A DNA stretch of 63,845 nucleotides from Chlorokybus atmophyticus (lineage: Eukaryota; Plantae; Mesostigma and Chlorokybus algae), in the NCBI GenBank assembly GCA_009103225.1, contig RHPI01000818.1, forward strand, positions 248,001-311,845. Direction: 5' to 3'. The notes beneath the pieces were generated by a model, which did no database searches, was not told the DNA's origin, and saw nothing but the letters and a program-made list of their open reading frames with translations. The position numbers and the translations under genes were made by a program. This document shows, piece after piece, positions 20,186 through 59,151 of the stretch (position 1 is the stretch's first letter; each line of letters begins with the position of its first letter).

Positions 20186-21694
20186 GGCGGCCGGACCCAC
20201 TGCCTCCAATACGGCGGCGGGCGGGCACAGCTTCGCCGCTCCCAAACTCTAGCCCGACCAGGGCACACCAAATCCTCTCCTTGCCAGCCACCTCGCCCCG
20301 CCCCGCCACGCCAACCCCGCCGCCAACGCCGCCGCCGCCGCCTCAGCCCTGAGCTCAACAAGCCAGGATTATTCAATGTTCCGGACAGCCCAAGAACCGA
20401 CAGCAGCAACCCCAAACCGAGACAGGCGCCGTCAACGCGCGGGGTAATTCGCCGGACTAGCCGGAACTATGTTCGCCTCTAACCGGGGTTTAAGCCGATC
20501 CGTACGGTACCGGCGCTTGTTTCCGTGGGCGAAGGGACCCGTGTTATGATGCCAGCGGTTTGGCTAACCGCGGTCGGGGGGGGGGCAACCCGACCGGGGT
20601 TTTTTGACAACATATCACCCCGACGGCGTTGCAGGAGGCGACAGGCGCTTGGCCGGTTGCATTCTCCCGGAAGCTTCGCCGATTCAGTGAAGATGACCCT
20701 GCGTGCGCCTGGACCGAGCCTTCTTGTGTCGGCGGGCCGGGGCATAAGTAGTTGTTCCACTCACCGACCAGTTCCCTGCGGGCCGGTAACGGCTGCTAGG
20801 TCTTCGAGACTCCCCATGTAATGATACCAACCATTGTAGGTGCATGACGCCATAATAATAGGCCGGCCACGTCCGGTACAACCCCTCCCTTCCGCAATGG
20901 CCTGGTACGACGGCGCTCAGTCAGTTGCGCAACCATGAAATGCCAAATGATGAAAGTTACCTCCCACTGCTCCAATGGCAAGCCGTTGCAACCACGGTTG
21001 CCCGTTTGTCTGATGTACAACTTTGGCTCGTATGACTCGGTCAGCAGGATGAACTATTTGCCCTCCGTTGCGGCGGGCAAGTTGTCAACTTCCTGCTGGG
21101 AAATTATTAGTGGTAACCCTTGGTGGAGGCGAGGGGATAGCAGCCTGACCGAGTTGCGGCTTGACCGAGCAGCTCCCTCATTGGACGGCAGTGACGTCGC
21201 AACAAGGCAAGGACTGACGTGTTGTCATCATTATGGTCGTTGACAAGACCCGCTAGTCTGGGAAAATGCACTATCGAAATCATGACCAGTGGCCTTGATT
21301 TGGCGCCGCAGAGTGAGCTGCGCGAAGGTGCTGCGAAGTCTGATGGCCACACAGCGAATCAGGTTGCTGTATGACGCAGTGATAGGCCTCGTCATCGACA
21401 GGAAGTCCCCGGCATCACGTTTTGTGTCGGCACACCCGTCATGTCCCGCCTGCGCCCTAGCTGGCAGCGAGACTGCCAACAAGCACAATGTGATTGCAAC
21501 TGGCACGACTCCCCGTACCGCATGCGACACATGCATCCGCATTGCGGCACGTTACTGTTGTTTACTGCGCCGACATCGGTGTATGTGGCACCCCTGGTCG
21601 GGACATAAGCATATATCGACGTCGGTGCATGTTAACATGTGCACATGCACTGTGTTGGAAGGCGGTGACGTGGCTAGTCTGGGCGACTAGGAGC

Positions 21695-22645
21695 ATGGCG
21701 GCGGCGGCGGCGGTGTTGTCGTTGCCGTCATGCGCTTTGCTACCAGTGGCAATAGGGAGGAAGCCCGTCGGAGCTAAGCGGCGAGGGACGTCTGATCTTC
21801 TGGCTAGGTTGCCTGTGGCGTCCCGGTCTGGCGTGGCCTGGCGGGCGGCACCAGGCCGGACCAACAACAGGAGGGTGTCGACTGTGTGCGGATTGCCCGT
21901 GCCGATCATAGGACCCTTTTTCAACCCTTTTACTGCATTCTTGCTGTACTCAGTTGGAGGTGCGCTAGCCCCAAAATTGAGTTCAGCAGTTGCAGCACGC
22001 ATGCAGGGTCATGAATGCTAGGGTTAACCGTCTCATTGACTATGAGTCATGGTCTGTGAGAGCTTTTCAAGCAAGCAGTTCATGCTGCGCATATGTAGCA
22101 TTGCTTCGCAACGACTATAAGTTTCTGTCATATCATGGCTGATGCATCATGAATTATAATCATTGTGGGTGATTACCGAAGCGGACAGTGCATCATGTTG
22201 GCATCGGCAGTCCCATTGCTTCAACCCCAGTCAGTGGTGTTTGCTGCGTCAGTTAAACAAAGCGACCTCAGTATCACCCTGTAGTAGTACACAACACGCA
22301 TTGTTCATTGCAGAGTTGCCTTTGAACTTGCAATGTTCCCCTCCAGTATTGAGGGCGGGCAAATTGTATTTTGGAATCCTTGTTTGCAAAGCTGACACCA
22401 GCAGTGTTCGGTCAATTGTGCAGTTGTCCGCTTCTTGGGTGGTTTTGAGAAGACGTCCTTCTCCGGCTCAACGCAAAACAAGTTGGGTCTCGCTGCTGCC
22501 TGGCCAGGTATTAGTTTGCACAATAAGGTGCTCTCCATCAATGCATCTCAGCGTGCCTGCTTATGTGGTGTGCGTTCTTGCAGTTCTGTTTGCAGTGTCA
22601 CCATCGTTTCGTGCAAATTTCAAGAAGGCCATATTAAGGACATAG
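21695..22645 (+). CDS. Small plastid-targeted membrane protein resembling a conserved cyanobacterial/algal hypothetical protein, 3 exons (~136 aa)
   Basis: Exons 21695-21959, 22424-22507, 22584-22645 join in frame with canonical GT-AG sites and matching phase 1. Product: transit-peptide-like MAAAAAVLSLPSC...RRVSTVC, then GLPVPIIGPFFNPFTAFLLYSVGVVRFLGGFEKTSFSGSTQNKLGLAAAWPVLFAVSPSFRANFKKAILRT*. Confidence 0.8.
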
Positions 22646-34649: not shown

Positions 34650-36533
34650 GCTCAGCTGCTCCACGCAGCGGCTTTCCAGGATCACTTCGCGCGCTCGCTC
34701 AAGCTCAACGCCATCAACAACGTCAAGCACCAGACCAAGCAGAAGAAGAAGCAGGCCGCCGCCGTTGGGCCCGGTGACAAGGATGCGGACAGCACCGGAG
34801 ATCGCACCTCCACCAACACGACAGACACTGACAACATCGACGATCAACAACACCGCCAGCGTCTAACACTTGGTAGTTACCCACATGTCTGTTATCTATC
34901 GCATCTAAACGATAAAGTGTCAACATGAAATCATATCGCAAACGGCACGCATGCTGCACTAGCAAACATCAATGGGCCCGAGTGTTATGCTGTGTGTATG
35001 TGTGCACGCCCGCGCGCGTACACGTGCGTGAGAGTGTTCAGGATGAGCCTACTCCTTCCTCCTCCTAGTTGTTCGTGCTAGCTGCCTTGCACGTGTCTAC
35101 GCATACATGTGTCTACGGCTGCTCCATGTAGGTAGTTACACCCTTCTAACTGTAACTCTGGTTACCAGCTCAGCGGCTCGGGCTAGTTGCCGCTCCCCCT
35201 CCCCGCCAGTCTCTTCGCTCAGCCCGCGCAGCCGCCCGCCAGCGAGGCGACCGCGCCTGCCCCGTCTGCCGCGAGCCCTTCCTCCAAGCTGTTGACACAC
35301 ACAACCACAACTACAACCACAACCATAATGGGCGCCAGCTGCTTCTCAGCTGCTCCCACACCTTCCATCATGTGAGGAGAGGGGGGGAGGAGGTGTCGCT
35401 CACTATTTTGTATATGAGTGGTGAGTGAAGAGAACCTGTGCATGTGCAGGCGTGTTTGAGGAGTTGGGAGAGGCATGTTGGAGGGAGGGTTTGTCCCGTG
35501 TGCAGAGGGGAAGATTATGTTACCACGGTTATAAGCGACGGGGCCAACTATGCCCGCGCACATGCTGCTACCGTGTAAGTGGCTATGGTAAAAACTAAGT
35601 ACCTGCTTAAGGAGCATATTGCTGTAATGGTTGTCGCTGTGCAGCATGCAGGCCGCATGGAGGGGTTTTCTTGCGCGGGTTCGGTTTCAGCGTCTCTTAG
35701 CGAGCATCCCGCCAAAGAGCCCCTCTGCGCGGCGCGTCTTCTTTGCAAATAAGGTGTGTTGTGTTCTTATTGTTGTGTGCTACCGTAAGCGTTGGTTGGT
35801 TGTGTCACAAGTTGTCCTTGAAACTGCAGTTGGAGGGGTTGAACAACGCTCTGCTGCACGACATCCAGAGCGAGCGCAGCGAATACGACGCGCTCGTAGC
35901 AGAGATGGACGCCGCTATCGCACACAGCCACTGCATATACAGGTGCAGAAGTGAACACTTGAGAAACAACATCAGGCTCACGTGCAATGTCAACCTTATC
36001 TGTGTGCTCACCACATACACACGCACGCACACACAGGCTTGCTACTGGTCATGCTGACTCCCCACCTTGCTCGCCTGATGCCCTGCCACCTGTATCTCCG
36101 ACACCGCCTTCACCTCAGAGGGTGCCTCAGGATACCATATGGACAGAGGCAGCCATCAAGGTGACAGACCACAAGACCACCTCACAACCACACGCTAGCA
36201 TAATGCAACACACTGATTCATTTGCCTGTTCAGGCTGTTGAGCGCGGTGCAGAAGACTGTCCCATATGTCTGATACCTTTGGACACCCCAGCATCAGGCC
36301 ACGTTTATGCCGCCAATACCGATGATAGCAACCTTCCCCAGCACCGATCCATTGCTTTGCTGACCTGCAGCCACGTTTTCCACTCGCAGTGCATTGCGAA
36401 CTTCGAGGCATTCACTAAAAGAAACAAAGGAGACAGAAATGTTGTTGGCAGCCAGGGCAGTAACAGTAGTATCAGCAGTCATCTAGCGTGCCCTGTTTGC
36501 CGCGCAGCCTACCAGCGCAGCACCTTTGTATAG
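34650..36533 (+). CDS. RNF32: RING-IQ-RING protein RNF32-like; start codon exon not identified
   Basis: AAAFQDHF; RLTLAQRLGL; RING1 CPVCREPF...LLLSCSHTFHHACLRSWE...CPVCR; IQ motif ATVMQAAWRGFLAR; RING2 CPICL...LLTCSHVFHSQCIANFEAF...CPVCRAAYQ. Stop TAG at 36531-36533. Confidence 0.88.
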
Positions 36534-36959
36534 ACATCTGCTGCAACGATTACCTGGCGCTATTCGGATCTAGCTGTTTGTCCTTCCAGATGCAGTAACA
36601 TATCGTTTGCCCAACGGTGACGGTGCCGTGCTCAGATCGGTACGAACTGCAGGCTTGGTACAAGTTGATGACATGAGAACCTCAGCAACGCAGCAGTACT
36701 GCCAATAGTGGCTACAAGGCCTCAAGGTCCTGCTCTGCGGCAGTCGTGCTAAGATGCGCAGCAAGGCTGTGAGTGTTGAGTGCACTATGTGAGCAGAACC
36801 CCACCACTAACTCAGGTACTAACTCAGGTACTTCTTCCCTCACACAGCCACTCGTGCTTGAATGAACAGGTCCGAAATGGTTCGTGCACAGATGTGTGCA
36901 TGAATCATTGACCCGTGGCCAGGGTACTAGCCATGGGTCAATGACTAGTTCCACAACAA

Positions 36960-37172
36960 CTATTGCGACAAATCATCATCAGAGCCCTTGGCAACCTTCA
37001 TATCTTGGACGTCAGCATCGCTGTCATCGTAGTCATCATAGTCAGAGTTAGAGTCGTTCTGGTAGTTGTCCTCATCGCAGTCAGAGTGGCTGTCATGGTT
37101 GCACACCCTGCAACTGCACTGTACTGCCAAACAGTGGCCAAAACCTACAGATGGGCTTGCACTGCAGAGCAC
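36960..37172 (-). pseudogene. 3' remnant of the F-box/LRR-like gene (paralogue of 49779-51372)
   Basis: VQCSCRVCNHDSHSDCDEDN...KVAKGS matches VQCSCRLCNHDSDSDYDEDN...EVAKGS at 49717-49850. Flanking non-coding DNA (36820-36920 vs 49600-49700) also aligns. No upstream LRR exons are present. Confidence 0.75.
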
Positions 37173-37652
37173 AATTTAGATGCTAATGCTGTAGCAAACC
37201 ACACGTACGCTGATGGGCGACACTGTGCAAATCCATAGCGGTGCGGTGGCAAGCAAGTATTCAACGAGGCACACAGCCAGCTTTCTTAGGTACCCAAAAG
37301 CACAACACACAGGCACGCACGCATGCTTGTGCTAATGTACACAAGTATACACATCACAAACAACCCTTCGGGGTGAAAGCGCACGCCTTGACCACCGCCC
37401 TCACGCCGTCAGGAATCGCAAAGTGAGGCAACTGATGTTTAGCTGTAATTGAATAGCGCTTACCAGGCAATGCGCCACCACCTTGCGCAATGCTTGCCGC
37501 TACTGCTTTTGCGCTGGCACTGCCGTTGCTGCAGGGGAGGTCTGCCCTAGGCTTGGGAGTGCCCCTGACAGGCACACCCTGACCCCAACCCTCCCTCCTC
37601 GGAGCAGATTGCAGCACTGCTGCGTTGCAGCAGGCCAAGGCCAACGCCTGCT

Positions 37653-38633
37653 TGTCACGCCCACAGGGCAAGCAAAAGTCATTCTCTGTCCCTTACTTGT
37701 GTGGTAAGTAAGATGAGACCAAGTGGGGACCCACACTACGCAAGCGTGTGTAGTGCTTGTGGGTGTGCTCTCATGTAGGTCTGCTCTAGAGCCTGTGCGG
37801 CCTTGAGCATGATGAACTACACAAGGCATGATTGCAAGCACAGGGCTGATCATAGCCGATGAGACATCATGTGATGTACAGAGACATGTGTGTGCATATG
37901 TCCGCATGTGTATGCATGTGTTTGCATATGTGTGCACATGTACGCATATGAGTGCATATGCGTGCATGAGAGGTATGTACTAGATGTATGCATGTATATG
38001 CATGCATGCGCATATGTGTGCATATGCGCGCATATGTATGCATAAGGATGCATATGTATGCATGAGTATGATGTCCTAGGCTGATGTGACCAGCCAAGGA
38101 CGTTCACAACGTCCAAGGATGATGTGTGTGATGTCCTAGGCTGATGTGACCAGCCTAGGGACGTTTACAATGTCCGAGGCTGATGTGGATCAGCCCTAGA
38201 CATGAGTTGTGGTCAACGCAGCCATGACAAGGCATGTAGCCTTGGACTTGAATGGATGTTCTAGGTCGGAGAGCAGCAAAGAGAGGGTATATGAACGGCC
38301 TCAACATGTGTTGAGGCAGCTCAGCATGTGCATACTCGACTCTTGTGTGTGGGGTGCCTAGTTTAGTTGTTCAAGGGGCTCTCCCTCTCATCCCATGTGG
38401 GGTGTGATGTCCGTGGCAGCTTTGCACATGTGTGTGAGGTGTGCTTGAGTGTGTGAGTGTGTGGGAGCTGAGTAGAGAGGTTGGTGTCATCCTCTCCTTC
38501 CTTGGTGCGGTGCTGTGACTTCCTCTGCAAGGTACTGCACCAGTGACGCTGGTAGGGCTTCCAGTAGTAAGTCCTTGTGCTTGTGCATAAGTTTGCCAAG
38601 CCGCCCAGCAAGTAAGTGAGTGGTATCGTTACA
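37653..38633 (+). repeat. 5' LTR (981 bp) with an internal (ATGC/ATAT)-rich tract and a ~60-bp tandem duplication
   Basis: Near-identical to 43918-44899 (about seven differences seen). gatgtcctaggctgatgtgaccagcc occurs at 38070 and 38130, with a degenerate third copy near 38172. Confidence 0.95.
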
Positions 38634-38635
38634 TN

Positions 38636-38976
38636 GCCTCAACATGTGTTGAGGCAGCTCAGCATGTGCATACAATCATCAACTCTTGTGTGTGGGGTGC
38701 CTAGTTTAGTTGTTCAAGGGGCTCTCCCTCTCATCCCATGTCGGGTGTGATGTCCGTGGCAGCATTACGCATGTGTGTGAGGTGTGCTTGAGTGTGTGAG
38801 TGTGTGGGAGCTGAGTAGAGAGGTTGGTGTCATCCTCTCCTTCCTTGGTGCGGTGCTGTGACTTCCTCTGCAAGGTACTGCACCAGTGACGCTGGTAGGG
38901 CTTCCAGTAGTAAGTCCTTGTGCTTGTGCATAAGTTTGCCAAGCCGCCCAGCAAGTAAGTGAGTGGTATCGTTACA
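38636..38976 (+). repeat. Extra partial LTR (3' third) following a single-N junction
   Basis: Repeats the last ~340 bp of the LTR. It differs from both full LTRs by a 5-nt insertion (aatca) and about four substitutions. Confidence 0.9.
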
Positions 38977-39412
38977 TTGGACTCGGAGCTTGCATTCCAA
39001 GCCTTGCATGCTTGCCCATCAGCTCATGCACTTGCTGCACCGTGCGTGCGTTGCATTCTTTGCTTGCACGCACTACATGGCAGGGTTTTGAGCTGATTGT
39101 GCATGCTAGTTGGTGCGTCCAGCTGCGTGCACACTTGCATGCACGATGTGGGTCGTTCTACACGCTGATTTGAGCATTAGTTGTGTGTTCTTGCTGCACA
39201 TACACAGCATTACACACGCATTGGCTTGTTGCTGCACCAGCTGCACGTGTGCGCGTGTGTGCGCGCGTGTGCGCGTGAGTGCATCTGTTACAGGGACCTC
39301 ACCTTGTGGTGTTGGCCCTAACCTTTGTGGCAATGGCTGAGCAAGAGCATACAGCAAGAGAGGAGGTATCTTGGGGCAATGATGTTGCTAAGACCACCCG
39401 ACAGCTTACACT

Positions 39413-42400
39413 TTGGGTGCCACGTTGTGTGAGCAGGTAACAGAGTTACAGCAACAATACGAGGCCAACATAGCTCAATGGCAACGGTCAAGTGACATCG
39501 TTGACTGTGCAATCCTAAGTAAGGGACATGTTGGTGCATCTGTTGATGCAAGTGTACATAACCACCGAGAGCGTAAGCGTAGCCGTGAAGCACAGCTCTG
39601 TGAAGCTGAAGCTGATGCTGCTCGGAGCCATGCTCTCATGTATAAGGGACATGAAGAGAGCAAGCCATGTATACAACAGGGATTGCCAATGGCTAGCTGC
39701 TCTGTGGACGTTGATACGCAATGTGCTTTCAGTGATTTGATGTCACGCCTTCCCCAACCATGCAATGTCGCTGTGTGGGACAACGAGTTGGGTGTACAGG
39801 TAGATAATCAATTCATGCAGCACGACTGTGCGGGCAAGTGTGTCTTGCTCAATGCACCTGTTGACGAGTTGTCAAACATGCTCAAGCACTATGTGGATTG
39901 CAAGAGCAAGAGTGCGCACAACACAAGTGCATGCGTGGTTGTACCCAAGCGTCCTGGGTTGTGGACCCGCTTTGTTAAGGGCATGCAGGTCCTGGGAGAG
40001 GTCAAGCTAGGTAAGGGGCAGATGCGTGTGTTGTATGACCCCCTTGCCATCCATGAGGTAAGTACTCTGGACTTGACTTGGTTGTTCAAGGCTTCTGTTG
40101 CGCATGTGCCGTGGATCTTGATGATAGACACGGGCACACCTGAGAACTTCGTGAGTGAATCTCTTGTGCGACGCTTAGGCATTCGTGTCAACAAGTGTGA
40201 TGACACGGTTGTTGCCTTGAACAAGCTTGAGATCCCCGTGCGGGGAGTTGTACGCTTGTCTGTGCGTGTGCAAGGCTATCATGCTCAGCTCAAGTTCTTG
40301 GTCATCCCAGTAGAGGTGCCAGGCGTGGATGTCATTGTTGGCAGCCACTGGGAGCAAGCATGTGGCTTGCGCACAGACGCGGACACAAAACTTTGCAGTG
40401 TACGCAAAGGTCGAGGTCGTGTGACCTTGCATGCAGATGGGCACAATGTTGCGCCCACTGTTAGCTCTGTTTATGATGCATCAAGTACGGATGTCTTTTG
40501 TTTTTTGTTGAGTGCCATGCAGGTGAAGAGGGCTGTTCGCCATGGAGCTCAACCTCTTCTAGTGCTTGTCTGGCCAGTCGGCAACGACGACACTTCTACC
40601 TCAGTTGGTGAGACCGGTGGCAAGCCACCAGACACGGCCCTTGAAGGTCTGTCGTCTAAATTTTCTGATGTGTTGCAAGCTGCATTGCCTGCATTGCCAC
40701 CTGAGAGGGACGTCTGGCATTCAATCCCTCCAGAGTCTGATGCGCAGCCTCCGTTCAGACCTGTGTATAGGCTGAGTCCAGCTGAGTATGCGGACATGGA
40801 GGGGCAGATCAAGGCCTTGCTTAGGAAGGGATTGATTGAGCCAAGTAGCTCTCCTTTCGGAGCACCCATTCTTTTCGTACCTAAGAAGGACGGCAGGCTA
40901 CGCATGTGCGTAGACTATAGGGCCTTGAACAAGCTGACCATCAAGAACAGGTATCCGCTGCCAAGGATAGATGATTTGCTTGATCAACTGAGTGGTGCCT
41001 CAGTGTTCAGCTCCTTGGATCTCATCAGTGGGTACCGTCAGATCCGGATCACACCGGAAGATGTGCCAAAGACAGCGTTCAGAACGCCTGTGGGACACTT
41101 TCAATACAAAGTGCTGCCTTTTGGTCTGACAAATGCGCCAGCCACCTTTCAAGCTATGATGAACCGTGTGTTTCACAAGCTGATCGGGAAGACAGTGCTT
41201 GTATATCTTGATGATATATTTGTGTTCAGCAAGGATGCTAACATGCACGTGACGCAAGTGCGCGAGGTGTTGGAAACGCTGCGTGCGCACCGACTCTATG
41301 CTTACATGCCCAAGTGCGAGTTTGGCAAGAAGAAACTAGAGTTCCTCGGGCACATTGTGAGCAAGGAGGGCGTGCGCCCTGACCCAAGGAAGGTTGCCAA
41401 GGTCAAGGATTGGCCTAGTCCCAAGAATGTGCACAAGCTGCGCGCATCTTTAGGCTTGAGCAACTATTTCCGCAAGTACATTCTGGGTTACTCATCGCGT
41501 GTTGCCCCTCTCACTAATCAGTTGCGTGACAAGGTCGTGTGGAGGTGGTCACAGAGGCAGCAAGAAGCCTTTACGTCCATCAAAGAGGCTTAAGTGACAG
41601 CGCCTGTGTTGCAGCTGCCGGACTTCACCAAGCCCTTTGAGGTAAACTGTGATGCCTATGTTGAAGGCACTGGTGCTGTGTTGCTCCAGAGTGGGCACCC
41701 TCTTGCTTATGCTAGCAAGGAGTTCTCTCCTGCTGAGAGGAACCATACAACAACCGAGCAAGAGTTGTTGGGGGTAGTCCATGCGCTACAAGAGTGGCGT
41801 TGCTATCTAGAGGGGGTGGAAGGCGGGTTTAGTGTGTTTACGGACCACAACCCCCTTGTTTTCTTTCAGACCCAACCAACCTTGTCGAGAAGACAAGCGA
41901 GGTGGGCTGAGTACTTGTGTAGATTCAACTTTACCTGGGTTTACAGACTAGGGAGAGTGAATGTGGCAGACCCTTTCAGCTGTTCGCCATTGCTGTTGGC
42001 AGTGACAACAAGTGCACGTGCACGAAGCCAAGGGTGGGCACAAGCAAGTGTTGCTAGTGCCAGTACTTTCGAGTTGCCATCTGTGCATGAGCAAGTTGTC
42101 AATGAGACACCAGTGGCAACAGAGACCAGCGAGATGCCAACTGAGCTCGAGAGAGCAGACAGTGAAGCACCGTTGGTAGTGCACGAGCCAAGTGGGGAGG
42201 ACCCAATGGCCGTTGATGTGGAAGACATCATACAGCGTTTGCCTAGTGCTTATGCACTTGACACACCTGGTTTGTTGAGTTGCTGAAGCAGGCAGACGAC
42301 AAGATCACTTGTCACAAGGGCCTCTGGTACCGTAAGGGCAAGTTGATAGTGCCAAATGCACTCGGCTTGAGGCAAGAGTGTCTGTTTGAGGCACACAATT

Positions 42401-43665
42401 CCGTGTACAGTGGGCACATGGGAATGGCAAAGACCATCAAGCAGCTGCAGAGACAGTATTGGTGGCCGAGCTTGGGTGCTGATGCATCTAAATATGTCGC
42501 GTGTTGTGACACTTGTAAAAGAAACAAGGCCTCGCACAGGAAGCCAGCAGGGTTGCTGAAGCCCTTGGCTATTTCCAACCATCAATGGGAGAGTGTGAGC
42601 ATGGATCTGATCACAGATCTACCTGTGACAAAGAAGGGACACAGTGCTGTCATTGTCTTTGTTGATCGCTTGACCAAGATGGTCAGATTTGAGCCCTGTC
42701 GCACAGACATTGATGCGCAAGAGTTTGCGTTTGTCTTTGTGAACTCGGTGTTCAGATCACACGGTGTACCCAAAGAGTTGGTGTCTGACCGTGACCCCAC
42801 GTTTGTGAGCCAGTTCTGGCAGGCTGTGTGCCGGTACTTGGGGACTAAGCAGAGCTTGAGCACTGCTTACCATCCACAGAGTGACGGACAGACGGAGCGC
42901 GTCAATCAGGTGTTGGAAGATGTGCTACGCCACTACACGTCACCCAGGTTTGATGATTGGGATGTGTACCTGCCACTTGCTGAGTTCGCTGTGAACAATG
43001 CATGGCATGAGTCGCTAAGAAGCACTCCTTTCTATCTGAACTACGGTCGTCATGTGTTGACACCCATGTCTCTGAATGTCGAGCCATTCAACAAAGTGCC
43101 GATGTCTAGAGACTTCACAGAGAGCATGTATGCCTCGTTGGCACATGCAAAGAACTGCTTGAGAGCAGCACAAGACAGGCAAAAGATGTATGTCAACAGG
43201 CAACGTAGGCCTGGAGATGAGCTCCAAGTTGGAGATCAAGTGTTGTTGAGCTCGAAGAACATTCGACTCAAAACAAGCGGGGTACACAAGTTGCTACCAA
43301 GATGGCTGGGTCCATTCCGCATCGCCGACAGTGTTGGTGACCGTGCCTTTCGGCTTGACTTGCCGAAGAGCATGCGAGTACATGATGTGTTTCATGTAGC
43401 ACTGCTGAAACAGTACAAGAGTGACGGTCGAGTGCAACCCCCTCCCCCTCCAGCTGAGGTTGAGGGCGATCTCGAGTATGAGGTCGAGGCCATTGTTGGC
43501 AAACGGTTAAGAAAATACAAGAAGAACTTTCGGATCCAATTCTTGGTGAAGTGGCTTGGTTATGGTGAAGAGCATAACACCTGGGAGCTGAAAACCAACT
43601 TGGCAAACTGTGCTGCCTTGTTGGAGGAGTTTGAGAATGAGGTCAAATCCACAGGTGCCACTTGA
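39413..43665 (+). pseudogene. pol: Retrotransposon polyprotein: Dam-like MTase remnant, aspartic protease, RT, RNase H, integrase, chromodomain; one in-frame stop and one frameshift
   Basis: Protease LMIDTG at 40127. RT LRMCVDYRALN...YPLPRIDDLLD...YLDD (41204). TAA at 41591-41593 is read through in frame to RNase H TAPVLQLPDF...CDA. Frameshift near 42265-42280. Integrase HHCC region, SMDLITDLP, SDRD, HPQSDGQTERVN, GPF/Y motif (RWLGPF). Chromodomain YEVEAI...FLVKWLGYGEEHNTWE. Confidence 0.95.
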
Positions 43666-43917
43666 GAGCGTGTGCTCAGAGCTACTAGTGCTCAGCCTGT
43701 AGGAGCATGTGCACATGCCCACAGCATCTTTATGTGACATACCAACACCGCATGCACTGGTACACAGTATCAGAGTTGGTTGTCACTCCCACGACTTGCA
43801 CTACTTTCACGTGAAGCACTGCCACTCAGTTAGGCCTGGCCAGCCAAGCTGCGGTTTGTGCGGGACTAGTGTCCCACCCTTTTGCAAAGCGGTCGTTGCA
43901 ATGCAAGTGGGGAGGAA

Positions 43918-44899
43918 TGTCACGCCAACAGGGCAGGCAAAAGTCATTCTCTGTCCCTTACTTGTGTGGTAAGTAAGATGAGACTAAGTGGGGACCCACA
44001 CTACGCAAGCGTGTGTAGTGCTTGTGGGTGTGCTCTCATGTAGGTCTGCTCTAGAGCCTGTGCGGCCTTGAGCATGATGAACTACACAAGGCATGATTGC
44101 AAGCACAGGGCTGATCATAGCCGATGAGACATCATGTGATGTACAGAGACATGTGTGTGCATATGTCCGCATGTGTATGCATGTGTTTGCATATGTGTGC
44201 ACATGTACGCATATGAGTGCATATGCGTGCATGAGAGGTATGTACTAGATGTATGCATGTATATGCATGCATGCGCATATGTGTGCATATGCGCGCATAT
44301 GTATGCATAAGGATGCATATGTATGCATGAGTATGATGTCCTAGGCTGATGTGACCAGCCAAGGACGTTCACAACGTCCAAGGATGATGTGTGTGATGTC
44401 CTAGGCTGATGTGACCAGCCTAGGGACGTTTACAATGTCCGAGGCTGATGTGTGATCAGCCCTAGACATGAGTTGTGGTCAACGCAGCCATGACAAGGCA
44501 TGTAGCCTTGGACTTGAATGGATGTTCTAGGTCGGAGAGCAGCAAAGAGAGGGTATATGAACGGCCTCAACATGTGTTGAGGCAGCTCAGCATGTGCATA
44601 CTCAACTCTTGTGTGTGGGGTGCCTAGTTTAGTTGTTCAAGGGGCTCTCCCTCTCATCCCATGTGGGGTGTGATGTCCGTGGCAGCTTTGCACATGTGTG
44701 TGAGGTGTGCTTGAGTGTGTGAGTGTGTGGGAGCTGAGTAGAGAGGTTGGTGTCATCCTCTCCTTCCTTGGTGCGGTGCTGTGACTTCCTCTGCAAGGTA
44801 CTGCATCAGTGACGCTGGTAGGGCTTCCAGTAGTAAGTCCTTGTGCTTGTGCATAAGTTTGCCAAGCCGCCCAGCAAGTAAGTGAGCGGTATCGTTACA
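43918..44899 (+). repeat. 3' LTR (982 bp)
   Basis: TG...CA termini, preceded by the PPT and followed by TSD CTGCT. Confidence 0.96.
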
Positions 44900-45374
44900 C
44901 TGCTGCACAACAAGGGCACCGCTGGGTCGGGCGACAGTAGAGATTGAATCGCTGGTGGTGGCTGAATGAGAGATTCCATCTAAGCTGAGATAGTCGTCTC
45001 CCATAACCACCAGCCCATTAACCAACCACTACGCCGCCGCCGCCGCCACCACCACCAAACCGCTTGCCTACCCCAGGTAACTTATTACAGCATGACTTGT
45101 GGTGATAACTTAAGGCAGATGACACGAAGGGATCCGAGCGGTACTATCCGTTGCTGGATCACACTGTCGCCCCCCACAACCACAAGCCCACCAACCGCCG
45201 CCGCCACCACCAAAGCACTTGATCACCAGATAAGATAGTGCCTCAATGTTTTTGAGCTGACGGCTCAAAGCCGCCAGGTCAGTAATGCGCGGCGCGGCTT
45301 CTCTCTGAGTGGCACGGCCGGTCATTGCTTAATCATCATGTTCAGCAAGAGTGGGTGTTGTGGTGTAGTCTACC

Positions 45375-45870: not shown

Positions 45871-46076
45871 TTGTGGAGAGCTGTTCCACAGCTAATCACT
45901 AATTGCCTCTTCCACTTTGCAAATCGTCGCAATATGTTTCCCTTGCCGGCCGACTAAATATTGGCAACGGCCGTGCACCTGAGGATACTAATTTAGACTG
46001 TCATGGCTCAGTCCACCTGTAATCTCGATACAGGGACCGGATAGTGACTTCCGTTACAATTTAGGGTTTAACGGTT

Positions 46077-46434
46077 GACTATGCCTAATTAACAGGCGCC
46101 TGTTAATTACCTATCAGGCCTTAACAGGTCACTATGCCTTATTAACAGCCACCTGTTGGTTACTTATCAAGCCTTAATAGGTGACTACAGTTAATTAACA
46201 GGCACCTGTTAATTGCTTATCAGGCCTTATTAGGTGACTACAACTAATTAATGGGCACCTGTGAGTTACACATCAGGCCTTAACAGGTGACTACACCTAA
46301 TTAGCAGGCACTTGCAAGTTACTCATCAATCTTACTTAGATGACTCAGCTTATGTGACAGGCACCTGCAGGTTACACACCGGTCCAGCGCAGGCAACTAA
46401 GCCTAATTTACAAGCACCAACTAGGTAATCATCG
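46077..46434. repeat. Tandem array of ~7 x 53-bp units, each with a 24-bp palindrome core
   Basis: Unit starts at 46077, 46130, 46183, 46236, 46289, 46342 and 46395 (exact 53-bp spacing). Unit 1 contains the perfect palindrome TAATTAACAGGCGCCTGTTAATTA (46086-46109). Confidence 0.95.
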
Positions 46435-47512: not shown

Positions 47513-49399
47513 CCAGGAGGCTTATTGGCTGCTCCCCCTCCCCGTCTCTGCAATCACCAGAGCGGCGACCACGCCTGGCCCGTCTGCCGCAAACCCATCC
47601 TCCAAGCTGTTAACACACACCACGACCGGCGCTGATTTGCAGCTGCTCCAACACCTTGTGGTGAGAGAGAGATGGTACTGTAGTTATAATAGCATGGCAC
47701 TTGGGCTATCATAGCCCACACACGCTTGAGCAAGCGTGCGTGTAGGTGCGAGACTGTACTATAGCAATAACGTTTGGCGAGACAACTGCGCACAGGCGAG
47801 CTTAAGGAGCTGGGAGAGGCATGTTGGAAGGGAAGATCTGTCTTGCGTGCTGAGACTACTACCACAGTCACAAGCAACGGGGCCAACCACGCCGCGCACT
47901 CTGCCATCATAAGGATGGCTGTGCTGTCCAAAAAACCTGCTTATGCAGGCAATGTTGCTTACGTTGGTGGTTGTCGCTGTGCAGCGTACAGGCAGCGTAG
48001 AGGGGTTTTCTTGCAATTGTTCAGCGTCTTCTAGCTAACACACTGCCAAGGAGCCCATCTGTGTGGCGCGACCTCTTGGCGATGAAGTTGTGTTGTGTTG
48101 TTGTTGATGATGTGTGAAAGTTACTGCTAGTTGTGTCACATGGGTGTTAAGGTTGCACTTGCTCTGATTATGGTGCAGCAACATGTTCAACCCTACCAGC
48201 TGCAGCACATTACTGCGGTCACAGAGATGGACATCACATACAGCGACTGTGCAAACAGATGCAGAATTAAATGATCAAAACAGCCAATATCAAGTGCTCG
48301 CATGCCACCAAGACTTGTATGCTGAACACACAAGCACGTACGCGCGTGCACGCTCACAGAGGCCGAGAGGCCAACCCCACTATCTAACCCCACTGGCAGC
48401 GCCTAACCGGCACATACAACAGCTGCTAGTACGACAGCACCGCTGCCGACAGGGCAGGGCTCAAGGGCAGGGCGCAGGGGCGGGGCAGAGGGGCGGGGCT
48501 GAGGGGCCCTCAGCCAGGGTTACAACATGCAGAACTGCGTGGGAATGGCGGGAGTGAGGCTGTGGGTGAAGGAGAACGGGAGAGGGGGAGTGGGGCCGTC
48601 TGCTGCTCATGCTCCTGGCTGCTGCGAAGAACTGCGAAACTAACTGACTGCACACGCGTGCAGGTAATGAGCAAACGCATGCATGTATGTCTGATGGGGG
48701 TTGAAGGCAGTAGGTACAATAGTTACGTGTGGCTAGTGTAGGTAGACCCCGTTGGTAAATAATCATTGCATGATGATGAGCTGGGTGAACAATGCATGTG
48801 TCATGCATGTTGCTTTTATCATGATCACTGCATTTTCTGTACACACATGCACACGGATACAGACCCACACAGGCTGTCTACTGGGCACGCCGTATCCCCA
48901 CCCTGTTCACCCTGATCCCTTGCCACCTTCTCCAACATCGCCTCCACAGCAACGGGCACCTCAGGAAACCATGGATACAAGCAGCCATCAAGATGAGAGA
49001 CCACGACACACCACCTCATCACCGCACGCTATTGCACTCAACTGAAACCAACTCGTTGCCTGTCTGTTCAGGCTGTTGAGCGCGGTGCTAAACACTGTCC
49101 CATATGTCTGGTACCTTTGGATATGCCGGCAGCAGGCCACAACAACTCCAGCAATTTTGACGACGGCCATCTTCCGCAAAGCCCTTTCAGCAAGGAGATG
49201 GATCGGATCCATCTGACCTGCAGCCACCTGTTCCACTCGCAGTGCCGCGCCAACTTTGAGGCGTTCACCAGGAGCCACAAGAGACAACAGTTTTGTTGAC
49301 AGCGGGAAAAGTAGTAGCAGTGATAGTACCCAATGTAGAACACTTGCGTGCCCTGTGTTTGCCGTGCAACGTACCAGCGCAGCCCCTTTGTATATATAG
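47513..49399 (+). pseudogene. RNF32: RNF32 pseudogene (tandem paralogue of 34650-36533)
   Basis: Exon-by-exon similarity to the intact copy. First RING Cys TGC>TGG. IQ Trp TGG>TAG at 47998-48000. Indels are present, the first exon is missing, there is an unrelated insertion at ~48330-48620, and RING2 is cut by TGA at 49297-49299. Confidence 0.9.
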
Positions 49400-49778
49400 A
49401 GGGCATTTGCTATGATGATAACTTGGCGCGAGGTTGAGATTATCATTTCACATGCAATGACTAAACCTTTTGTCCCACAAAGACGGTCCGGTGCTTTGAT
49501 GGCAAAGAGCTGCAGGCTGTTACAAGATGATGACACAAGAGAAACTTAGCATAGCAGCAGTACTACTTTGAGTGCACTATGTGAACAGAGCCCAACCACT
49601 CATTCAAGTACTGGTACAAAGTAAATAATCGTGCTCAACTGAACGGGTCCGGAATGACTCGTGCACAAAATCGTGCATGTGCTAATGACAAATGGCCTAA
49701 GCTACAGCAGCAAGAGCCCTTGGCAACCTCTAATTCTTGATCTTCATCATTGTTGCCATCGGAATCAAAGTCGTGGTG

Positions 49779-51372
49779 TTAGTTGTCTTCATCATAGTCA
49801 GAGTCGCTGTCATGGTTGCACAGCCTGCAGCTGCACTGCACAGGATAAGTGGCTGTTGTGCCTCCCGGCTCCCGCGTGCAATAGACGTCACCGCTGGCAG
49901 CCTCCTGAAGCAGCTTTTCGCGATTGTCCCACAAGTCCGTTATGCGGCACAGTGCAATGGCTGCATTGGGAAAGATGGACGCCAGGCGTTCTGTCAACTC
50001 CACAGGTGTAAACCCGGATAACTGGGGGTGTACACCAGCGCACAGCACGATGCGAACTGTCTTTACTTGCGGCATGACGATCGGGCCAGGACCTTCTATA
50101 TCCTCAGCCTCTTCATAGTCAGGCTGGCAAACGTCCTTGCAGAAGTTGAAGTAGGTGTCGTTCCATCCAGAGTCCACAATGCAGATGAGGGTCTCCAAAT
50201 GTTGCAAGCGAGCAACACTGTGCAGCACGTCTCTGCGAAAGTGGCCTTTGGTGGGAGTCATTGCCAACACGCGCAGGTTGGGCATGTTGTGTGCTAATTG
50301 CGCGAGTTCAGAGGCACCAGCTGTTGCCGTGCATGTGAACACCTCCACACTCGTGCATCCTGCGCAGAGGTTGTCTCCGGTGGCGCAGCTGGTCAAGATG
50401 TTGCCGTACAGGTGAAGTTCTCTCAACTTGGGCAGCGTTGTGTGCGACAGCACTTTGTTGACATATTGCCATACCACAAAGTACGGAAACTCTGCAAACA
50501 CCGGCCAAGACGATTCAGCCAGCTTAACGGCAAGAGTTGTCAGAGATTGTTGGCTCAGCTTCATAACCAGCGACGCCACCAAGGTGCAGCATTCTCTCTC
50601 CTGCTTTTCATTTGCATCTTCATCCTTGTGTCCCTGTTACACAAGGCTGTGCTCAGTGCCGTACGCAACAAGTCCAGCTTAGCAGTCACGAAGCTTGCAG
50701 CACCTACTGCGCTTACTAAATCAGTAACCATGAGCTTCAGTTTCGTTACATATGCAATTGCCCACAGCTGCTTGCTATAGCAACACAACTGATTCATACA
50801 AGCTCGACTCGGTTCAATCCTCATTCAGCAAGCGCAGGGGTCCAGCTTCTTCCGGGCTCTAGTGTTGTGAGTAGTACTTTGGTGACAGCTGGTGATTGTC
50901 ACACACACCGAGCAGTTGTAGATGCACTGTGCAAACACATTCCAGTGTGTGCACTCACCCCTTCGAAGGCAAGCACGAGAGTTTCAAGCTGTGTGATGTG
51001 CCGACTCATGGAGGCTGTATGTTTCATGAGTCTGGTAGCAAAAGCCTCGGTGACATCCAGCTGCTTCCAGGCATGGTAGCGTGCGCACAGGTCTCTGAAC
51101 AGCTTGCAGACAGAAGCCATCCTTGTGATGAACGCCCAATGCTCGAGGTCCTTGACCTCAGCAGCATGCACTAGGCCGTCTATGATCAACTCCCACACGG
51201 CTAACCCTGATTGGTTGGCTGGTCTCCTCGCCAACCAAGCTGCTGCCATGCTTCTGAACCTCTCCCAAATGTACTCCGTAGCCTCCTCGTCCTCCTCTTC
51301 TTTGGACACCACCTTTGGTGGCGCCTCCGCCTTGCGTTGAAGACGCTGACCACTCCAGTAACTGCCCGGCAC
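49779..51372 (-). CDS. F-box-like / leucine-rich-repeat protein, probably 3 or more exons; start uncertain
   Basis: F-box-like LAVWELIIDGL...RMASVCKLFRDLCARYHAWKQLDV. LRR-like LPKLRELHLYGN, MPNLRVLAM and LQHLETLIC. Plausible GT-AG introns restore the frame (GGG|gtgagt, TTA|gtaagc, taacag|GGA). Acidic C-terminus. Confidence 0.65.
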
Positions 51373-55412: not shown

Positions 55413-58400
55413 ATGCCTGCGCCTGGCAGGCGGAAGGGCAGGCGAGGTGGAGGCGGAGGAGTGGGTGCAGGCAGCACGTGGAACAAGGGGCCTGTGCTGC
55501 CGGCGGCGCTGCGTAAAGCGCTTGTGGAAGGGGAAGAGGCAGGGGAAGGCACTGCAGGGAGCAACAAGACATCAGGTACTTAGTTTAATCGTTGATAGAC
55601 AAGGACATGGAATATTGTGCGGGGATATGGTTTCAACCAATGCTGATCGCTGGTGTTGCTTACTTGAATTGGGTAATAATAACACATGCAGTTTGCACTT
55701 ATCACGTTTCAGTACAAGGTGCTAGCTCTATTCAACAATAAATGTTCCTAATGCTGTGCCTGCCCGCATTATCTCTGCATGTCACGCTATGCTGCTTCAC
55801 TTCACGATTGCAAGCACACTTACACAATGTAGTCAGTTGAACGTGGCTTGCCTCTGTTAGCATTTGCATGTACATCGGCTGTAAGCTGCTGCCATTGATT
55901 GTCACACTGTTGCAACCGCTTAGTCCCGAAGCTTAATGAGCAGCTCAAGTTAGGTTGGTCTGTTACACTGCTCATGCCTGATTGCTTGCGGTTATTTAAC
56001 TGCCCGTTGGGTGTTCTTACATTGGCAAAAAATGCCTGACGGAACAGTTCTTGTCACCTTTTTTAGAACAACCTTCTCCAACTCATGCGTGTTTGCAGCT
56101 TCAAGTGGGCAGCACTCCCGCAAACAGAAGCGGCTGCTTGCCAAACAGCTCAAGGTCGGTCTTGCGCAGTTGTTGTTTCAGTTAATGGAGAGTAAGACTT
56201 GGTCAGAAAAGACTCGTACCTATGCAGTCATTAACAGCATCTTTTTGTGCTCCTGTAATGCACTGCAGGTCCAAAAGCGACAGCAGCATCAAACAGCTTT
56301 GCGCGCTCGCAGCAATAAGCCACAGCCTTTGCAGGCAACACAACCGCAGGGTGCAAAGGCAAAACCCAAGCAGCAAAAGCAGTTGACACATCCATCATCA
56401 ACCAATGGCACCGCAAAGGCAAAACCGGCGGCACAGAAGAACAGCAAGCTATCAACAAAAAGGCCAAGGCCTAACCCGAAGCATCTCAGCGCTGAGGATG
56501 CAGAGCTCAAGCGGCTGGCGAAGAAGCTCAAGATCAAGAGCGGCAAGTTGACTGGACCGGATGACGGGCTTCAGGCCTTGCTCGGCGGCCTTGCGGGACC
56601 GGATTTGTCCGCTGAGGAGCTCAGCGGCCGTGAAGGTGGCTTGAGTGATGATGATGAAGAAAGTGGAGAGGACGGAGATCTTGACTCTGAGGCTGGTCTT
56701 TTTGATGACCGAGATGAGCTGCATGGAGATGAGGACGACGATGTTGGTCATGAAGTTGATGAAGATGAAGACGATGGCAATGAAGAGGAGGAGGAGACGG
56801 AGGCCAATGCAAAAGGCTCTCCTCCTAAGGGTGCTAAGGGCGCGTACGTCCCGCCTCATCTGCGGCAGTCACAAGTGGACACGAGCGAGGCAGCGTTGCG
56901 GCTTCAGCGTCGCGTGCGTGGGCTGCTCAACAGGTTGACAGAGGCCAACATCGAGTCGATCATGAAGGAGTCGGTGAGCTTGTACATGACAATGACGAGG
57001 CACAACGTGACGTTGGCCGTCACGTCCGAGATCATCTCGACCTGTGCCAGCGGCAATCGCGGCAATGATCAGCATGCGGCCACCTTCGCGGCCTTCATGG
57101 GCGCGGTCTCGGCAGTTTCCGGCTCCGACGTCGGCGCACAATTCGCTGCAGCACTCGCGGTGAGGCTGGAAGAAGCGGTTGCTGATGATGATAGCCTTGC
57201 CAGCCGCAACCTTGCAATTGCCGCCGCCCACCTTTACGTGTTCGGGGTGCTGGAAGCGGTGGCCATATTCAGCCTGTTGCAGGTGTGTGCGTGTGTGCTT
57301 GCGTGTGTACATGCGTGCGCTTGTGCAATCACACTTCAGTGGTTTCTGCCTGCTGTTCAGTTGATTCTGTTTGCAACTATGTATGCAGATGCTTTGCCAA
57401 CGATTTACCGAGCAAGATGTCTCCACGATAGTGGTCTTGCTTCAGTCTTGTGGCATGCAGCTGCGCGCCGAAGACCCTGCGGCCATGAAGGAGTTCATTG
57501 TGGCTGTGCATGCACGCGCTGCTGACCGGTAGGAAGGGGGGGGGGGGGGTGCATTGGCTACTGTTACTATTGATTGTGACAATGCCTCTAGCTTACCTGC
57601 ACGTTTGCATAGGCCGCAGGGGGAAGGTGCAATCAGCAAGCGCGTGCAGTTTATGCTGGATATGATTGTGGACATCAAGAACAACAAGGGCGTGGCTGCG
57701 CGCAAGAAGGAAGCTGCCGCTGTGGGCGCTGGCGCCCAGCAAGCGAAGCTTAAGAAGTGGGTGAAGGGCCTCGGGGTGTCTGAAGTGACGCTTCGGTCCG
57801 TCACATGGCAGAAGCTGCTGGAACCCAACAAGAAGGGCCGCTGGTGGCTGCCAGCAGCAGCTGGGGAGGAATTAGGTACATTAACCGCTTTGGTTGACTT
57901 GTGCTTCTGTGTGTTTGGTTCTGTGCGCGTGTGTGCGCGCCCCAGTGCTCTTGTGCTTAAGGCATGCGCACGTGTGTGTTAATGCAAGTCCTGCAAGTGC
58001 AGGCGCGTGCAGGAGAATATTCTCATGCATGCGCGCGTGCATGCATGCGTTTATGTGCGTGTTACCTTGCCAAACAATTCAAAGCCCAGGGTATGCTCTA
58101 TTCAGGTTACTCAACACTTGTTTGCCCGCACAGATAATTTTGCCGGCAGACCCCTTGTTGAAGACAACCAAGAAGGCGCTGAGCTCCTGCAGTTGGCGGC
58201 CCAGCAGCGCATGAGCACATCAGCAAGGAGGGCAGTGTTCTGCGCCATCATGGCTGCCGAAGACTACCTCGACGCGCACGCAAGGATACAGGGCCTTTCT
58301 CTCCCTGGCGCGCAGGCACGGGAGGTCCCGCGCGTGCTTGTGGAATGCTGCTTGCAAGAAGCCGCGTTCAACCCTTATTATGCTGCCCTCGCCACACATT

Positions 58401-59151
58401 TATGTCAACTTGACCACAATCACAAGGTGAGGTTACTCGTACCTCTTGTGCTGTTGTGTATGCAACTGCTTCAACCAAACATGGTATTGCCTTGTTGTGC
58501 AGGTCACTTTCCAGTACTGCTTTTGGGACCATTTCAAGCAGCTGTCGGGTATGGAACTGAGGCGTGCGGCGAACTTGGGCCGTCTCATTGCACACATGGT
58601 TGGGTCCTTTGCAATCTCATTAGCCGTGTTGAAAACTCAGGTGAGACTTGTGTGTGCTTGTCCAATGTGCCCCATGCAACCACTGCATGATGTTTGCTGC
58701 AATGTACGCAAGTGTATTGCATGCACCGTGCACGTGTTCATGTTTGGTGCAACGTGCGCATTTCTAACATGAGGGCGTTGCATGTGCACTATGTGCATAT
58801 GCAATGTGTGCAACTTGTTGAGTGCACTCATGCTGATTCCAACATGTGCATGCGTCACAGGACCTGGTTGACACTGTGTCCATGTCCCCGCGGGGCGTGC
58901 TGTGCTTCCGTGTGGTGTTTGAACATCTCCTCACCGACTACGACGATGAGACTGTGCGCGGCGTGTTCGGCCGAGTGGCCGGCCAGCCCACGCTGGCCCC
59001 GCTTCGCGACGGCGTGAGCGTGTTCATCATCCAGCACGTGCTCATCCCGCGCGTACTGCAGGGGCTGTCAAGCGAACAGGCTGCTGAGATGAAGCGCAGG
59101 TGGAAGCTTGGCAAAAAGGCCATGACGGATATCACGAGCTTCGGCCTGTGA
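55413..59151 (+). CDS. NOM1: Nucleolar MIF4G/MA3 domain protein NOM1/Sgd1-like, ~7-8 exons
   Basis: Basic/acidic N-terminus; KGAYVPPHLR; RRVRGLLNRLTEANIESI (MIF4G); SKRVQFMLDMIVDIKNNK; VTWQKLL..KKGRWWL; LAAQQRMSTSARRAVFCAIMAAEDYLDA; CCLQEAAFNPYYAAL; TFQYCFWD (MA3). Stop at 59149-59151. Confidence 0.93.

What the first reader, a model, noticed from the sequence alone, without database searches (positions are those of the whole stretch)
39707..40042. Ty3/gypsy chromovirus carrying a degenerate Dam-like N6-adenine methyltransferase domain in front of its protease
Seen, in frame with PR-RT: AFSDLMSRLPQPCNVAVWDNELG...FMQHDCAGKCVLLNAPVDELSNMLKHYVDCKSKSAHNTSACVVVPKRPGLWTRFVKGMQVL...MRVLYDP. By eye this follows the phage Dam-type (PF05869-like) pattern I recall from algal retroelements: FLxxDxAGxxVWLNPPF...HYLxCKxxAPxxTSAxxxVPxW...W...GM...YDP. 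The catalytic NPPF is changed to NAPV (39851-39862) and the SAM-binding acidic residue is eroded. Established: Dam-like domains occur in DIRS1-type retrotransposons, and 6mA at ApT marks active genes in green algae. Inference: an LTR lineage with an MTase-derived module that may once have marked its own cDNA or now acts as a dead reader or decoy. Together with the chromodomain it gives two chromatin-facing modules. I know of no description of this architecture in streptophyte Ty3 elements, but I cannot search the literature.
Basis: partly seen in the sequence, partly recalled or inferred. Interest (0 to 1): 0.8.

Follow-up and report, generated by a model that had tools for sequence, protein, structure and literature searches.

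The report
Decayed Dam domain in streptophyte retrotransposon
A recently inserted but defective Ty3/gypsy chromovirus in a streptophyte genome carries, just ahead of its protease, a worn-down relative of the phage Dam adenine methyltransferase; elements of this kind were first described in a 2026 preprint, which reported them absent from streptophytes.

Summary
The quoted residues lie at 39707-40042 in the same reading frame as protease and reverse transcriptase, inside an LTR retrotransposon at 37653-44899. The element has LTRs 99.3% alike, a 5-bp target duplication, the order PR-RT-RNaseH-integrase, and a chromodomain.

The segment itself hits no family library. It does have 101 relatives (best E 2e-14), and 39 of 100 of them match Pfam Dam (PF05869); the closest scores above Pfam's own cut-off. 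A window-anchored profile aligns to phage Dam proteins at 97.5% probability, with the catalytic tetrad in register. Relatives show the same Dam-PR-RT-RH-INT(-chromo) layout, with a separate gag gene upstream.

This copy is decayed. Its tetrad fits the canonical pattern at two of four columns, and the domain has one insertion and one deletion. No gag is detectable, and pol has one stop and one frameshift.

The architecture is already published as "DAM-LTRs" (bioRxiv 10.64898/2026.05.21.726589). What is new is the host: an ARF gene 18 kb away marks a streptophyte, the group that preprint calls DAM-LTR-free. Its HMM screen would have missed a copy this diverged.

Verdict: new member of a known kind, of moderate interest.

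The parts
37648..37652 (.). left copy of the 5-bp target-site duplication (CTGCT)
   Evidence: read directly; same 5 bases follow the 3' LTR
37653..38976 (+). 5' LTR (TG...CA); holds a 343-bp tandem duplication of its own 3' part with one N at the joint
   Evidence: blastn of the two ends 99.3% over 982 bp
38978..38990 (+). putative primer-binding site (starts TGG one base after the LTR)
   Evidence: position and sequence only; no tRNA match was tested
39413..43665 (+). pol gene, given as one part because it is broken: Dam-like domain, PR, RT, RNase H, integrase, SH3, chromodomain. It has one in-frame stop and one frameshift. The first upstream ATG is in another frame, so the true start is unclear.
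   Evidence: relatives' polyproteins align in two pieces spanning 39806-43632
39707..40042 (+). Dam-like (PF05869-related) N6-adenine methyltransferase-derived domain. It is decayed: canonical at 2 of 4 catalytic-tetrad columns, with one insertion (about 10 aa) and one deletion (about 25 aa) relative to relatives.
40091..40357 (+). retropepsin-type aspartyl protease
   Evidence: Pfam Asp_protease_2 / gag-asp_proteas / RVP_2
40877..41359 (+). reverse transcriptase
   Evidence: Pfam RVT_1 E 7.1e-36, full profile
41621..41926 (+). RNase H
   Evidence: Pfam RT_RNaseH E 3.8e-30
42367..42876 (+). integrase zinc-binding domain and catalytic core
   Evidence: Pfam Integrase_H2C2 E 5.2e-19, rve E 3.6e-12
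43231..43416 (+). integrase C-terminal SH3 (Tf2-1-like)
   Evidence: Pfam E 1.3e-17
43477..43638 (+). chromodomain
   Evidence: Pfam Chromo E 1.5e-16
43905..43917 (+). polypurine tract abutting the 3' LTR
   Evidence: read directly
43918..44899 (+). 3' LTR
44900..44904 (.). right copy of the target-site duplication (CTGCT)

Best explanation
The segment is the remnant of a Dam-family (Pfam PF05869, phage T1-like) N6-adenine methyltransferase domain at the N-terminus of Pol. The element is a chromovirus of the recently described DAM-LTR kind, with the layout Dam-PR-RT-RNaseH-integrase-chromodomain. In intact relatives the module is proposed to put 6mA on the element's reverse-transcribed DNA, or otherwise to engage host 6mA chromatin, so that new insertions look transcriptionally permissive. 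That is the preprint's model, and activity has not been shown. In this copy the module is most likely catalytically dead, and the copy as a whole is non-autonomous, so today it does nothing. Shown: homology, architecture, the decayed state, the recent insertion, and the streptophyte host. Inferred: loss of catalysis; that the decay predates insertion; and that the module is dispensable or under relaxed constraint in this lineage, possibly because the host lacks abundant 6mA.
For: Homology:
- 101 relatives, best E 2e-14.
- PF05869 is found in 18 of 38 long and 21 of 62 short relatives.
- The best relative, P0001, scores 39.5 bits against the curated cut-off of 28.1. It matches 567 phage records at genes annotated Dam or DNA N-6-adenine-methyltransferase.
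- hhalign of the window-anchored alignment against four phage Dam proteins gives 97.5% probability, E 8e-12, over 88 columns. It still gives 91%, E 1.1e-6, when only relatives with a non-canonical tetrad are used.
- The AF2 model built with the alignment has pLDDT 78, above 86 in the core. Its highest-probability fold matches are an N6-adenosine methyltransferase (PCIF1, rmsd 3.3 A over 89 columns) and a phage DNA N6-adenine methyltransferase (rmsd 3.4 A over 113 columns).

Architecture:
- P0009 has Dam-PR-RT-RH-INT in one 1324-aa ORF, with a PF03732 gag ORF upstream.
- The closest PR-RT relatives (44-47% identity) also carry the domain.

Decay:
- The copy itself has no direct Pfam, PHROG, NCBIfam, PDB or phage hit.
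- At the four tetrad columns, the window's residue is shared by 71, 30, 98 and 10 of 112 relatives.
- There is one insertion and one deletion inside the domain.

Defective copy:
- No gag similarity was found, and there is too little room for one.
- pol has one stop and one frameshift.

Timing: the LTRs differ at 6 sites and one gap in 982 bp. Only about one change is therefore expected in the 336-bp segment since insertion, so its decay was inherited from the source copy.
Against: - The window copy never reaches a family threshold by itself; the link to Dam is transitive or profile-based.
- Fold searches gave no match at E<=1e-3.
- Only about 40% of a phage Dam (columns 52-140 of 228) is covered.
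- No TE-borne Dam has been shown to methylate DNA; the preprint's E. coli assay was negative. 'Catalytically dead' is therefore judged against a reference whose own activity is unproven.
- 30 of 112 relatives share the window's residue at the second tetrad column, including open polyproteins of about 1270-1490 aa. That change alone may be tolerated.
Confidence: 0.85

Rival explanations
1. The lineage keeps the Dam fold as a non-catalytic module, for example for binding SAM, DNA or 6mA, or for a structural role in Pol processing. Catalysis has been given up, so the domain is a pseudo-enzyme and not junk.
For: - In 112 relatives, the helix and strand after the tetrad are nearly invariant: the window's residue is shared by 98-109 of 112 at eight core columns. 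The tetrad columns are much freer, at 71, 30, 98 and 10 of 112.
- Only 7 of 21 uninterrupted polyproteins of 900 aa or more have the canonical tetrad, yet all 21 keep most or all of the eight core residues.
- The window copy keeps all eight core residues.
Against: - There is ascertainment bias: relatives were found by likeness to a query that has the core but not the tetrad.
- Among the closest PR-RT relatives, several have 130-250 residues before the protease with no detectable Dam likeness even to a profile (P0249, P0252, P0254, P0255). That looks like continuing loss, not retention.
- This particular copy is defective anyway.
- No binding function is known for any TE-borne Dam.
Confidence: 0.2
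2. The domain in this copy's lineage is still an active adenine methyltransferase that uses a variant catalytic tetrad.
For: The window's second-column residue is common in relatives (30 of 112), including open polyproteins of about 1270-1490 aa. The aligned acidic SAM-site residue is kept.
Against: - The aromatic fourth column is not kept; only 10 of 112 relatives share the window's residue there.
- The tryptophan before the tetrad, present in 46 of 62 relatives, is also lost.
- There is one insertion and one deletion inside the fold.
- The copy has no direct hit to any family model.
Confidence: 0.05
3. The segment is the C-terminal or nucleocapsid part of Gag.
For: It lies where a Gag C-terminus would lie in a gag-pol fusion, and no separate gag is detectable in this copy.
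Against: In relatives a separate gag ORF (PF03732 in L001; 360-380 aa ORFs in L002-L004) lies upstream of a pol that begins with this domain. The domain's relatives hit PF05869 and never a gag family. There is no zinc knuckle.
Confidence: 0.02
4. The element does not belong to the streptophyte genome: the contig is a chimera, or the element comes from a contaminating chlorophyte.
For: The 5' LTR contains an N and a 343-bp duplication, so the local assembly is imperfect. The named RT relatives are chlorophyte (Haematococcus).
Against: - A perfect 5-bp target duplication flanks the element.
- Diverged paralogous RING-gene segments lie on both sides of it.
- Base composition is even across the junctions.
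- The ARF gene is on the same contig, 18 kb away.
Confidence: 0.05

Closest known systems
[quoted passage not shown]
   Same: A Ty3/gypsy-like LTR element with a Dam-type domain in the pol polyprotein and a chromodomain on the integrase. The Dam part corresponds only to the central part of prokaryotic Dam.
   Different: The host is a streptophyte, a group the preprint reports as lacking DAM-LTRs. The domain here is too diverged to pass the preprint's hmmsearch criterion of E<=1e-5. The catalytic triplet that the preprint calls almost universal is not intact. This copy lacks gag. Placement in the preprint's tree was not tested.
Methyltransferase domain of DIRS1-type retrotransposons
   Same: It is the same Dam-derived domain family. 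The preprint infers that LTR elements captured it from DIRS-like elements.
   Different: DIRS elements use a tyrosine recombinase and have split or inverted repeats. This element has an rve integrase, direct LTRs and a target duplication.
Phage T1-like Dam, Pfam PF05869 (for example the Dam of Escherichia phage vB_EcoS_W011D, MK778457.1)
   Same: Profile-profile match at 97.5% probability. The SAM-site aspartate motif, the catalytic tetrad and the following strand are in register.
   Different: Only columns 52-140 of 228 are matched. The phage N- and C-terminal parts are not matched, and 2 of the 4 tetrad columns differ in the window copy.
Gypsy-DNMT3 elements of streptophytes (mentioned in the preprint)
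   Same: A streptophyte Ty3/gypsy element that carries a DNA methyltransferase module.
   Different: There the module is a cytosine-5 methyltransferase of eukaryotic origin. Here it is an adenine-N6 type of prokaryotic or phage origin.

Membership tests
Ty3/gypsy chromovirus | direct LTRs with TG...CA ends and a short target-site duplication | tested here: met
   LTRs 99.3% identical, TG..CA ends, CTGCT on both sides
Ty3/gypsy chromovirus | pol order PR-RT-RNaseH-INT | tested here: met
   Pfam hits in that order
Ty3/gypsy chromovirus | chromodomain at the integrase C-terminus | tested here: met
   PF00385 E 1.5e-16
Ty3/gypsy chromovirus | gag gene upstream of pol | tested here: not met
   No gag family hit. 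No similarity to the relatives' gag ORFs. Too little room between the LTR and the domain. The copy is therefore non-autonomous; membership by descent is not affected.
Dam family, Pfam PF05869 | match to the family model at the curated cut-off | tested here: not met
   The window copy has no hit even at E<=1. Its closest relative passes: 39.5 bits against 28.1.
Dam family, Pfam PF05869 | profile-level homology to bona fide phage Dam | tested here: met
   hhalign 97.5% probability, E 8e-12; 91% with non-canonical relatives only
Dam family, Pfam PF05869 | catalytic Asn-Pro-Pro plus aromatic tetrad (invariant N-P-P in phage Dam) | tested here: not met
   The window fits at 2 of 4 columns.
Dam family, Pfam PF05869 | acidic residue of the N-terminal SAM-site motif | tested here: inconclusive
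   An aspartate is aligned to the invariant phage aspartate, but the alignment there is weak.
Dam family, Pfam PF05869 | methyltransferase alpha/beta fold | tested here: inconclusive
   AF2 pLDDT 78. The best-probability matches are N6-adenine/adenosine methyltransferases, but all have E>0.01.
Dam family, Pfam PF05869 | adenine-N6 methylation activity | not testable with these tools
   No assay is available here; the preprint's assay of intact TE Dams was negative.
DAM-LTR (2026 preprint) | Dam domain in the same polyprotein as a Ty3/gypsy-type RT | tested here: met
   same open frame as PR-RT
DAM-LTR (2026 preprint) | operational criterion: hmmsearch hit to Dam at E<=1e-5 | tested here: not met
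DAM-LTR (2026 preprint) | placement inside one of the five named DAM-LTR lineages | not tested
   The preprint's sequences are not on hand, and the relatives found here carry no organism names.
DAM-LTR (2026 preprint) | host encodes AMT1 and has 6mA chromatin (an association, not a definition) | not testable with these tools
   Only 64 kb of the host genome is available. The preprint states that streptophytes lack abundant 6mA.
DIRS1-type retrotransposon | tyrosine recombinase in place of an rve integrase | tested here: not met
   rve integrase and direct LTRs are present.

The most novel reading that the evidence does not exclude
Streptophyte algae harbour their own lineage of DAM-chromoviruses, overlooked by HMM-threshold screens. 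This lineage went on transposing after the catalytic tetrad was lost, while the core of the fold stayed nearly invariant. That would make it a retrotransposon-borne pseudo-methyltransferase with a non-catalytic role toward chromatin or nucleic acid. It would also weaken the proposed link between DAM-LTRs and hosts with AMT1-type 6mA.
Probability: 0.15. Interest if true: 0.65.

Novelty: new member of a known kind. Interest (0 to 1): 0.4.

Why it matters
The only paper on DAM-LTRs uses their absence from Streptophyta and Metazoa as support for a functional tie to host AMT1/6mA chromatin. A DAM-chromovirus integrated next to an ARF gene shows that at least one streptophyte genome received or kept such elements recently. 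It also shows that screens based on the Pfam Dam model at E<=1e-5 miss diverged copies. The decayed catalytic motif fits two readings: relaxed constraint in a host poor in 6mA, which would support the preprint's idea, or a non-catalytic role, which would add to it. This one copy is a defective relic and has no function of its own.

Tried and rejected
- Direct family scans of the segment (Pfam, PHROGs, NCBIfam) found nothing. Nor did PDB sequence search or tblastn against 50,697 phage genomes.
- The word-indexed protein search restricted to residues 40-226 found nothing among proteins of 400-1270 aa. The exhaustive search was needed.
- Single-sequence AF2 was useless, with pLDDT 42.
- The PDB profile search with A2 gave only DDI1-type protease hits, from the protease residues included in the alignment, and PCIF1 at E 0.27.
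- Foldseek gave no match at E<=1e-3. Fold evidence is therefore supportive only.
- Gag was sought with the relatives' gag ORFs against the element and the whole window, without result.
- Sister copies were sought and not found. There is no other copy in the window, no exact product on record, nothing in IMG/VR or JGI metagenome contigs, and no protein above 47% identity in the collections over most of the ORF (58% at most, over shorter RT-only stretches).
- The organisms of the relatives could not be named, because the sources give none.
- The Gag-C-terminus reading and the DIRS reading were considered and rejected (see the rival explanations and the membership test).

Full report
**1. The observation.** They lie in a long open frame that continues into an aspartyl protease and a full-length reverse transcriptase.

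**2. The element.**
- The two ends, 37653-38633 and 43918-44899, are 99.3% identical over 982 bp.
- The LTRs start with TG and end with CA, and the same five bases (CTGCT) flank the element on both sides.
- A TGG-initiated primer-binding-like site follows the 5' LTR, and a purine tract precedes the 3' LTR.
- The 5' LTR runs to 38976 because it carries a 343-bp tandem duplication of its own end, with one N at the joint. This may be an assembly artefact.
- Pfam finds PR, RT, RNase H, integrase zinc-binding domain and core, a Tf2-type SH3 and a chromodomain, in that order. This is a Ty3/gypsy chromovirus at 37653-44899.
- Pol is broken by one in-frame stop and one frameshift. Relatives' polyproteins align to it in two pieces.
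- No gag is detectable. There is no gag family hit and no similarity to the gag ORFs of relatives. Between the LTR and the domain there is too little open sequence for the 360-520 aa gag that relatives have. The copy is non-autonomous.

**3. What the segment is.**
- By itself it matches nothing in Pfam, PHROGs, NCBIfam, PDB sequences or phage genomes. The word-indexed search was also blank.
- The exhaustive search of 1.84 billion representatives found 101 relatives at E<=1e-3, the best at 2e-14. All but one (a low-complexity hit) align over query residues about 130-215.
- PF05869 (Dam) is found in 18 of 38 long relatives and 21 of 62 short ones. Protease, RT, RNase H, integrase and chromodomain families appear downstream in the long ones.
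- The closest relative, P0001, scores 39.5 bits against Pfam's cut-off of 28.1. It matches 567 phage genomes at genes annotated as Dam or DNA N-6-adenine-methyltransferase.
- I fetched four such phage genes, aligned them and compared profiles. The window-anchored alignment A2 matches them at 97.5% probability, E 8e-12, over 88 columns. An alignment holding only the window copy and relatives with non-canonical tetrads still gives 91%, E 1.1e-6.
- The phage SAM-site aspartate motif, the catalytic tetrad and the following strand are all in register. Only the central part of the phage protein (columns 52-140 of 228) is covered, which agrees with the preprint's description of eukaryotic Dam domains.
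- An AF2 model made with the alignment is confident in the core (pLDDT 78 overall, above 86 for residues 50-135). Its highest-probability structural matches are the PCIF1 N6-adenosine methyltransferase and a phage DNA N6-adenine methyltransferase. No match reaches E<=1e-3, so the fold evidence is only supportive.

**4. State of the domain in this copy.**
- In an alignment with 14 relatives, the copy keeps the aligned aspartate of the N-terminal motif.
- It keeps all eight residues of the nearly invariant core after the tetrad.
- It fits the Asn-Pro-Pro-aromatic pattern at only two of four columns.
- It has lost the tryptophan that 46 of 62 relatives have before the tetrad.
- It has one insertion of about 10 residues and one deletion of about 25 residues.
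- The LTRs differ at only 6 sites and one gap. About one change is therefore expected in this 336-bp segment since insertion, so the decay was inherited from the source copy. This step is inference.

**5. The family.**
- Across 112 relatives, the window's residue at the four tetrad columns is shared by 71, 30, 98 and 10. Eight core columns are shared by 98-109.
- The canonical tetrad is present in about 30 of 100 relatives, and in 7 of 21 uninterrupted polyproteins of 900 aa or more.
- Among the closest PR-RT relatives (44-47% identity), the state of the pre-protease region varies. One relative is canonical and several are non-canonical. Four have 130-250 residues before the protease with no detectable Dam likeness even to a profile.
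- This pattern fits repeated decay and loss of the module. The uneven conservation also leaves room for a non-catalytic role. The sample is biased by how it was found, so I do not decide between the two.

**6. The host.** An uninterrupted ORF at 18089-19351 (-) has a B3 domain and the ARF ancillary domain. Its best matches are land-plant class-C-type ARFs at 50-55% identity. Mutte et al. 2018 report that this multidomain protein appears only in charophytes and land plants (PMC5873896). The host is therefore a streptophyte, not closely represented in the protein collections. The element's target duplication, the paralogous RING-gene segments on both sides and the even base composition argue against a chimeric contig.

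**7. Comparison with what is known.**
- Dam-like domains were long known in DIRS elements.
- A preprint of May 2026 (10.64898/2026.05.21.726589) describes DAM-LTRs, including a green-algal DAM-chromovirus clade. It proposes that they exploit 6mA-marked permissive chromatin. Its heterologous assay found no activity, and it states that DAM-LTRs are absent from Streptophyta.
- Its screen used hmmsearch at E<=1e-5, which this copy would fail.
- The architecture is thus known. The streptophyte host and the degree of decay are new.

**8. Limits.** Sister copies could not be surveyed. The relatives carry no organism names.

**9. Conduct.**
- The pieces of the broken pol were searched separately.
- A search profile (HMM) of 15 aligned natural domain sequences was built in /scratch, only to detect the domain in other proteins.
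- One slip: my first notebook entry copies open-reading-frame bounds from the ORF listing inside the broken pol, and these coincide with the places of the breaks. I had also worked through these bounds in my own reasoning.

Noticed in passing
window 18089-19351 (-): Uninterrupted 420-aa ORF with a B3 domain and the ARF ancillary domain. It is 50-55% identical to land-plant class-C-type ARFs (ARF10/16/18-like) over about a third of its length. It marks the host as a streptophyte. There is a long spacer between the two domains.
   Followed up: partly
window 35239-37124 and 47557-49841: About 2 kb on each side of the element is a diverged direct duplication (77-86% identity, spacing 12.3-12.9 kb). 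The ORF at 36222-36533 (+) holds part of a RING finger. The element sits between two tandem paralogues.
   Followed up: partly
window 38298-38977: The 5' LTR carries a 343-bp tandem duplication of its own 3' part, 97% alike, with a single N at the joint. The 3' LTR has one copy. This is either an assembly artefact or a real LTR length variant.
   Followed up: partly
window 37885-38199 and 44150-44465: Inside both LTRs there is a 10-bp-period array (about 17 units of a CATATGTATG-like unit), followed by a 60-bp repeat of 2.2 copies.
   Followed up: no
window 56011-57525 (+) and 58007-58690 (+): ORFs with MIF4G and MA3 domains, probably exons of one eIF4G-like host gene.
   Followed up: no
window 46068-46378: Tandem array of a 53-bp unit (about 5.5 copies, 77-79% matches) about 1.2 kb downstream of the element.
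   Followed up: no
window 20001-22000: Local GC peak of 0.61 against a window average of about 0.52, next to the ARF gene.
   Followed up: no
relatives P0249, P0252, P0254, P0255: Close PR-RT relatives of the element have 130-250 residues before the protease with no detectable Dam likeness. The pre-protease module appears to be lost or replaced repeatedly within one RT clade.
   Followed up: partly
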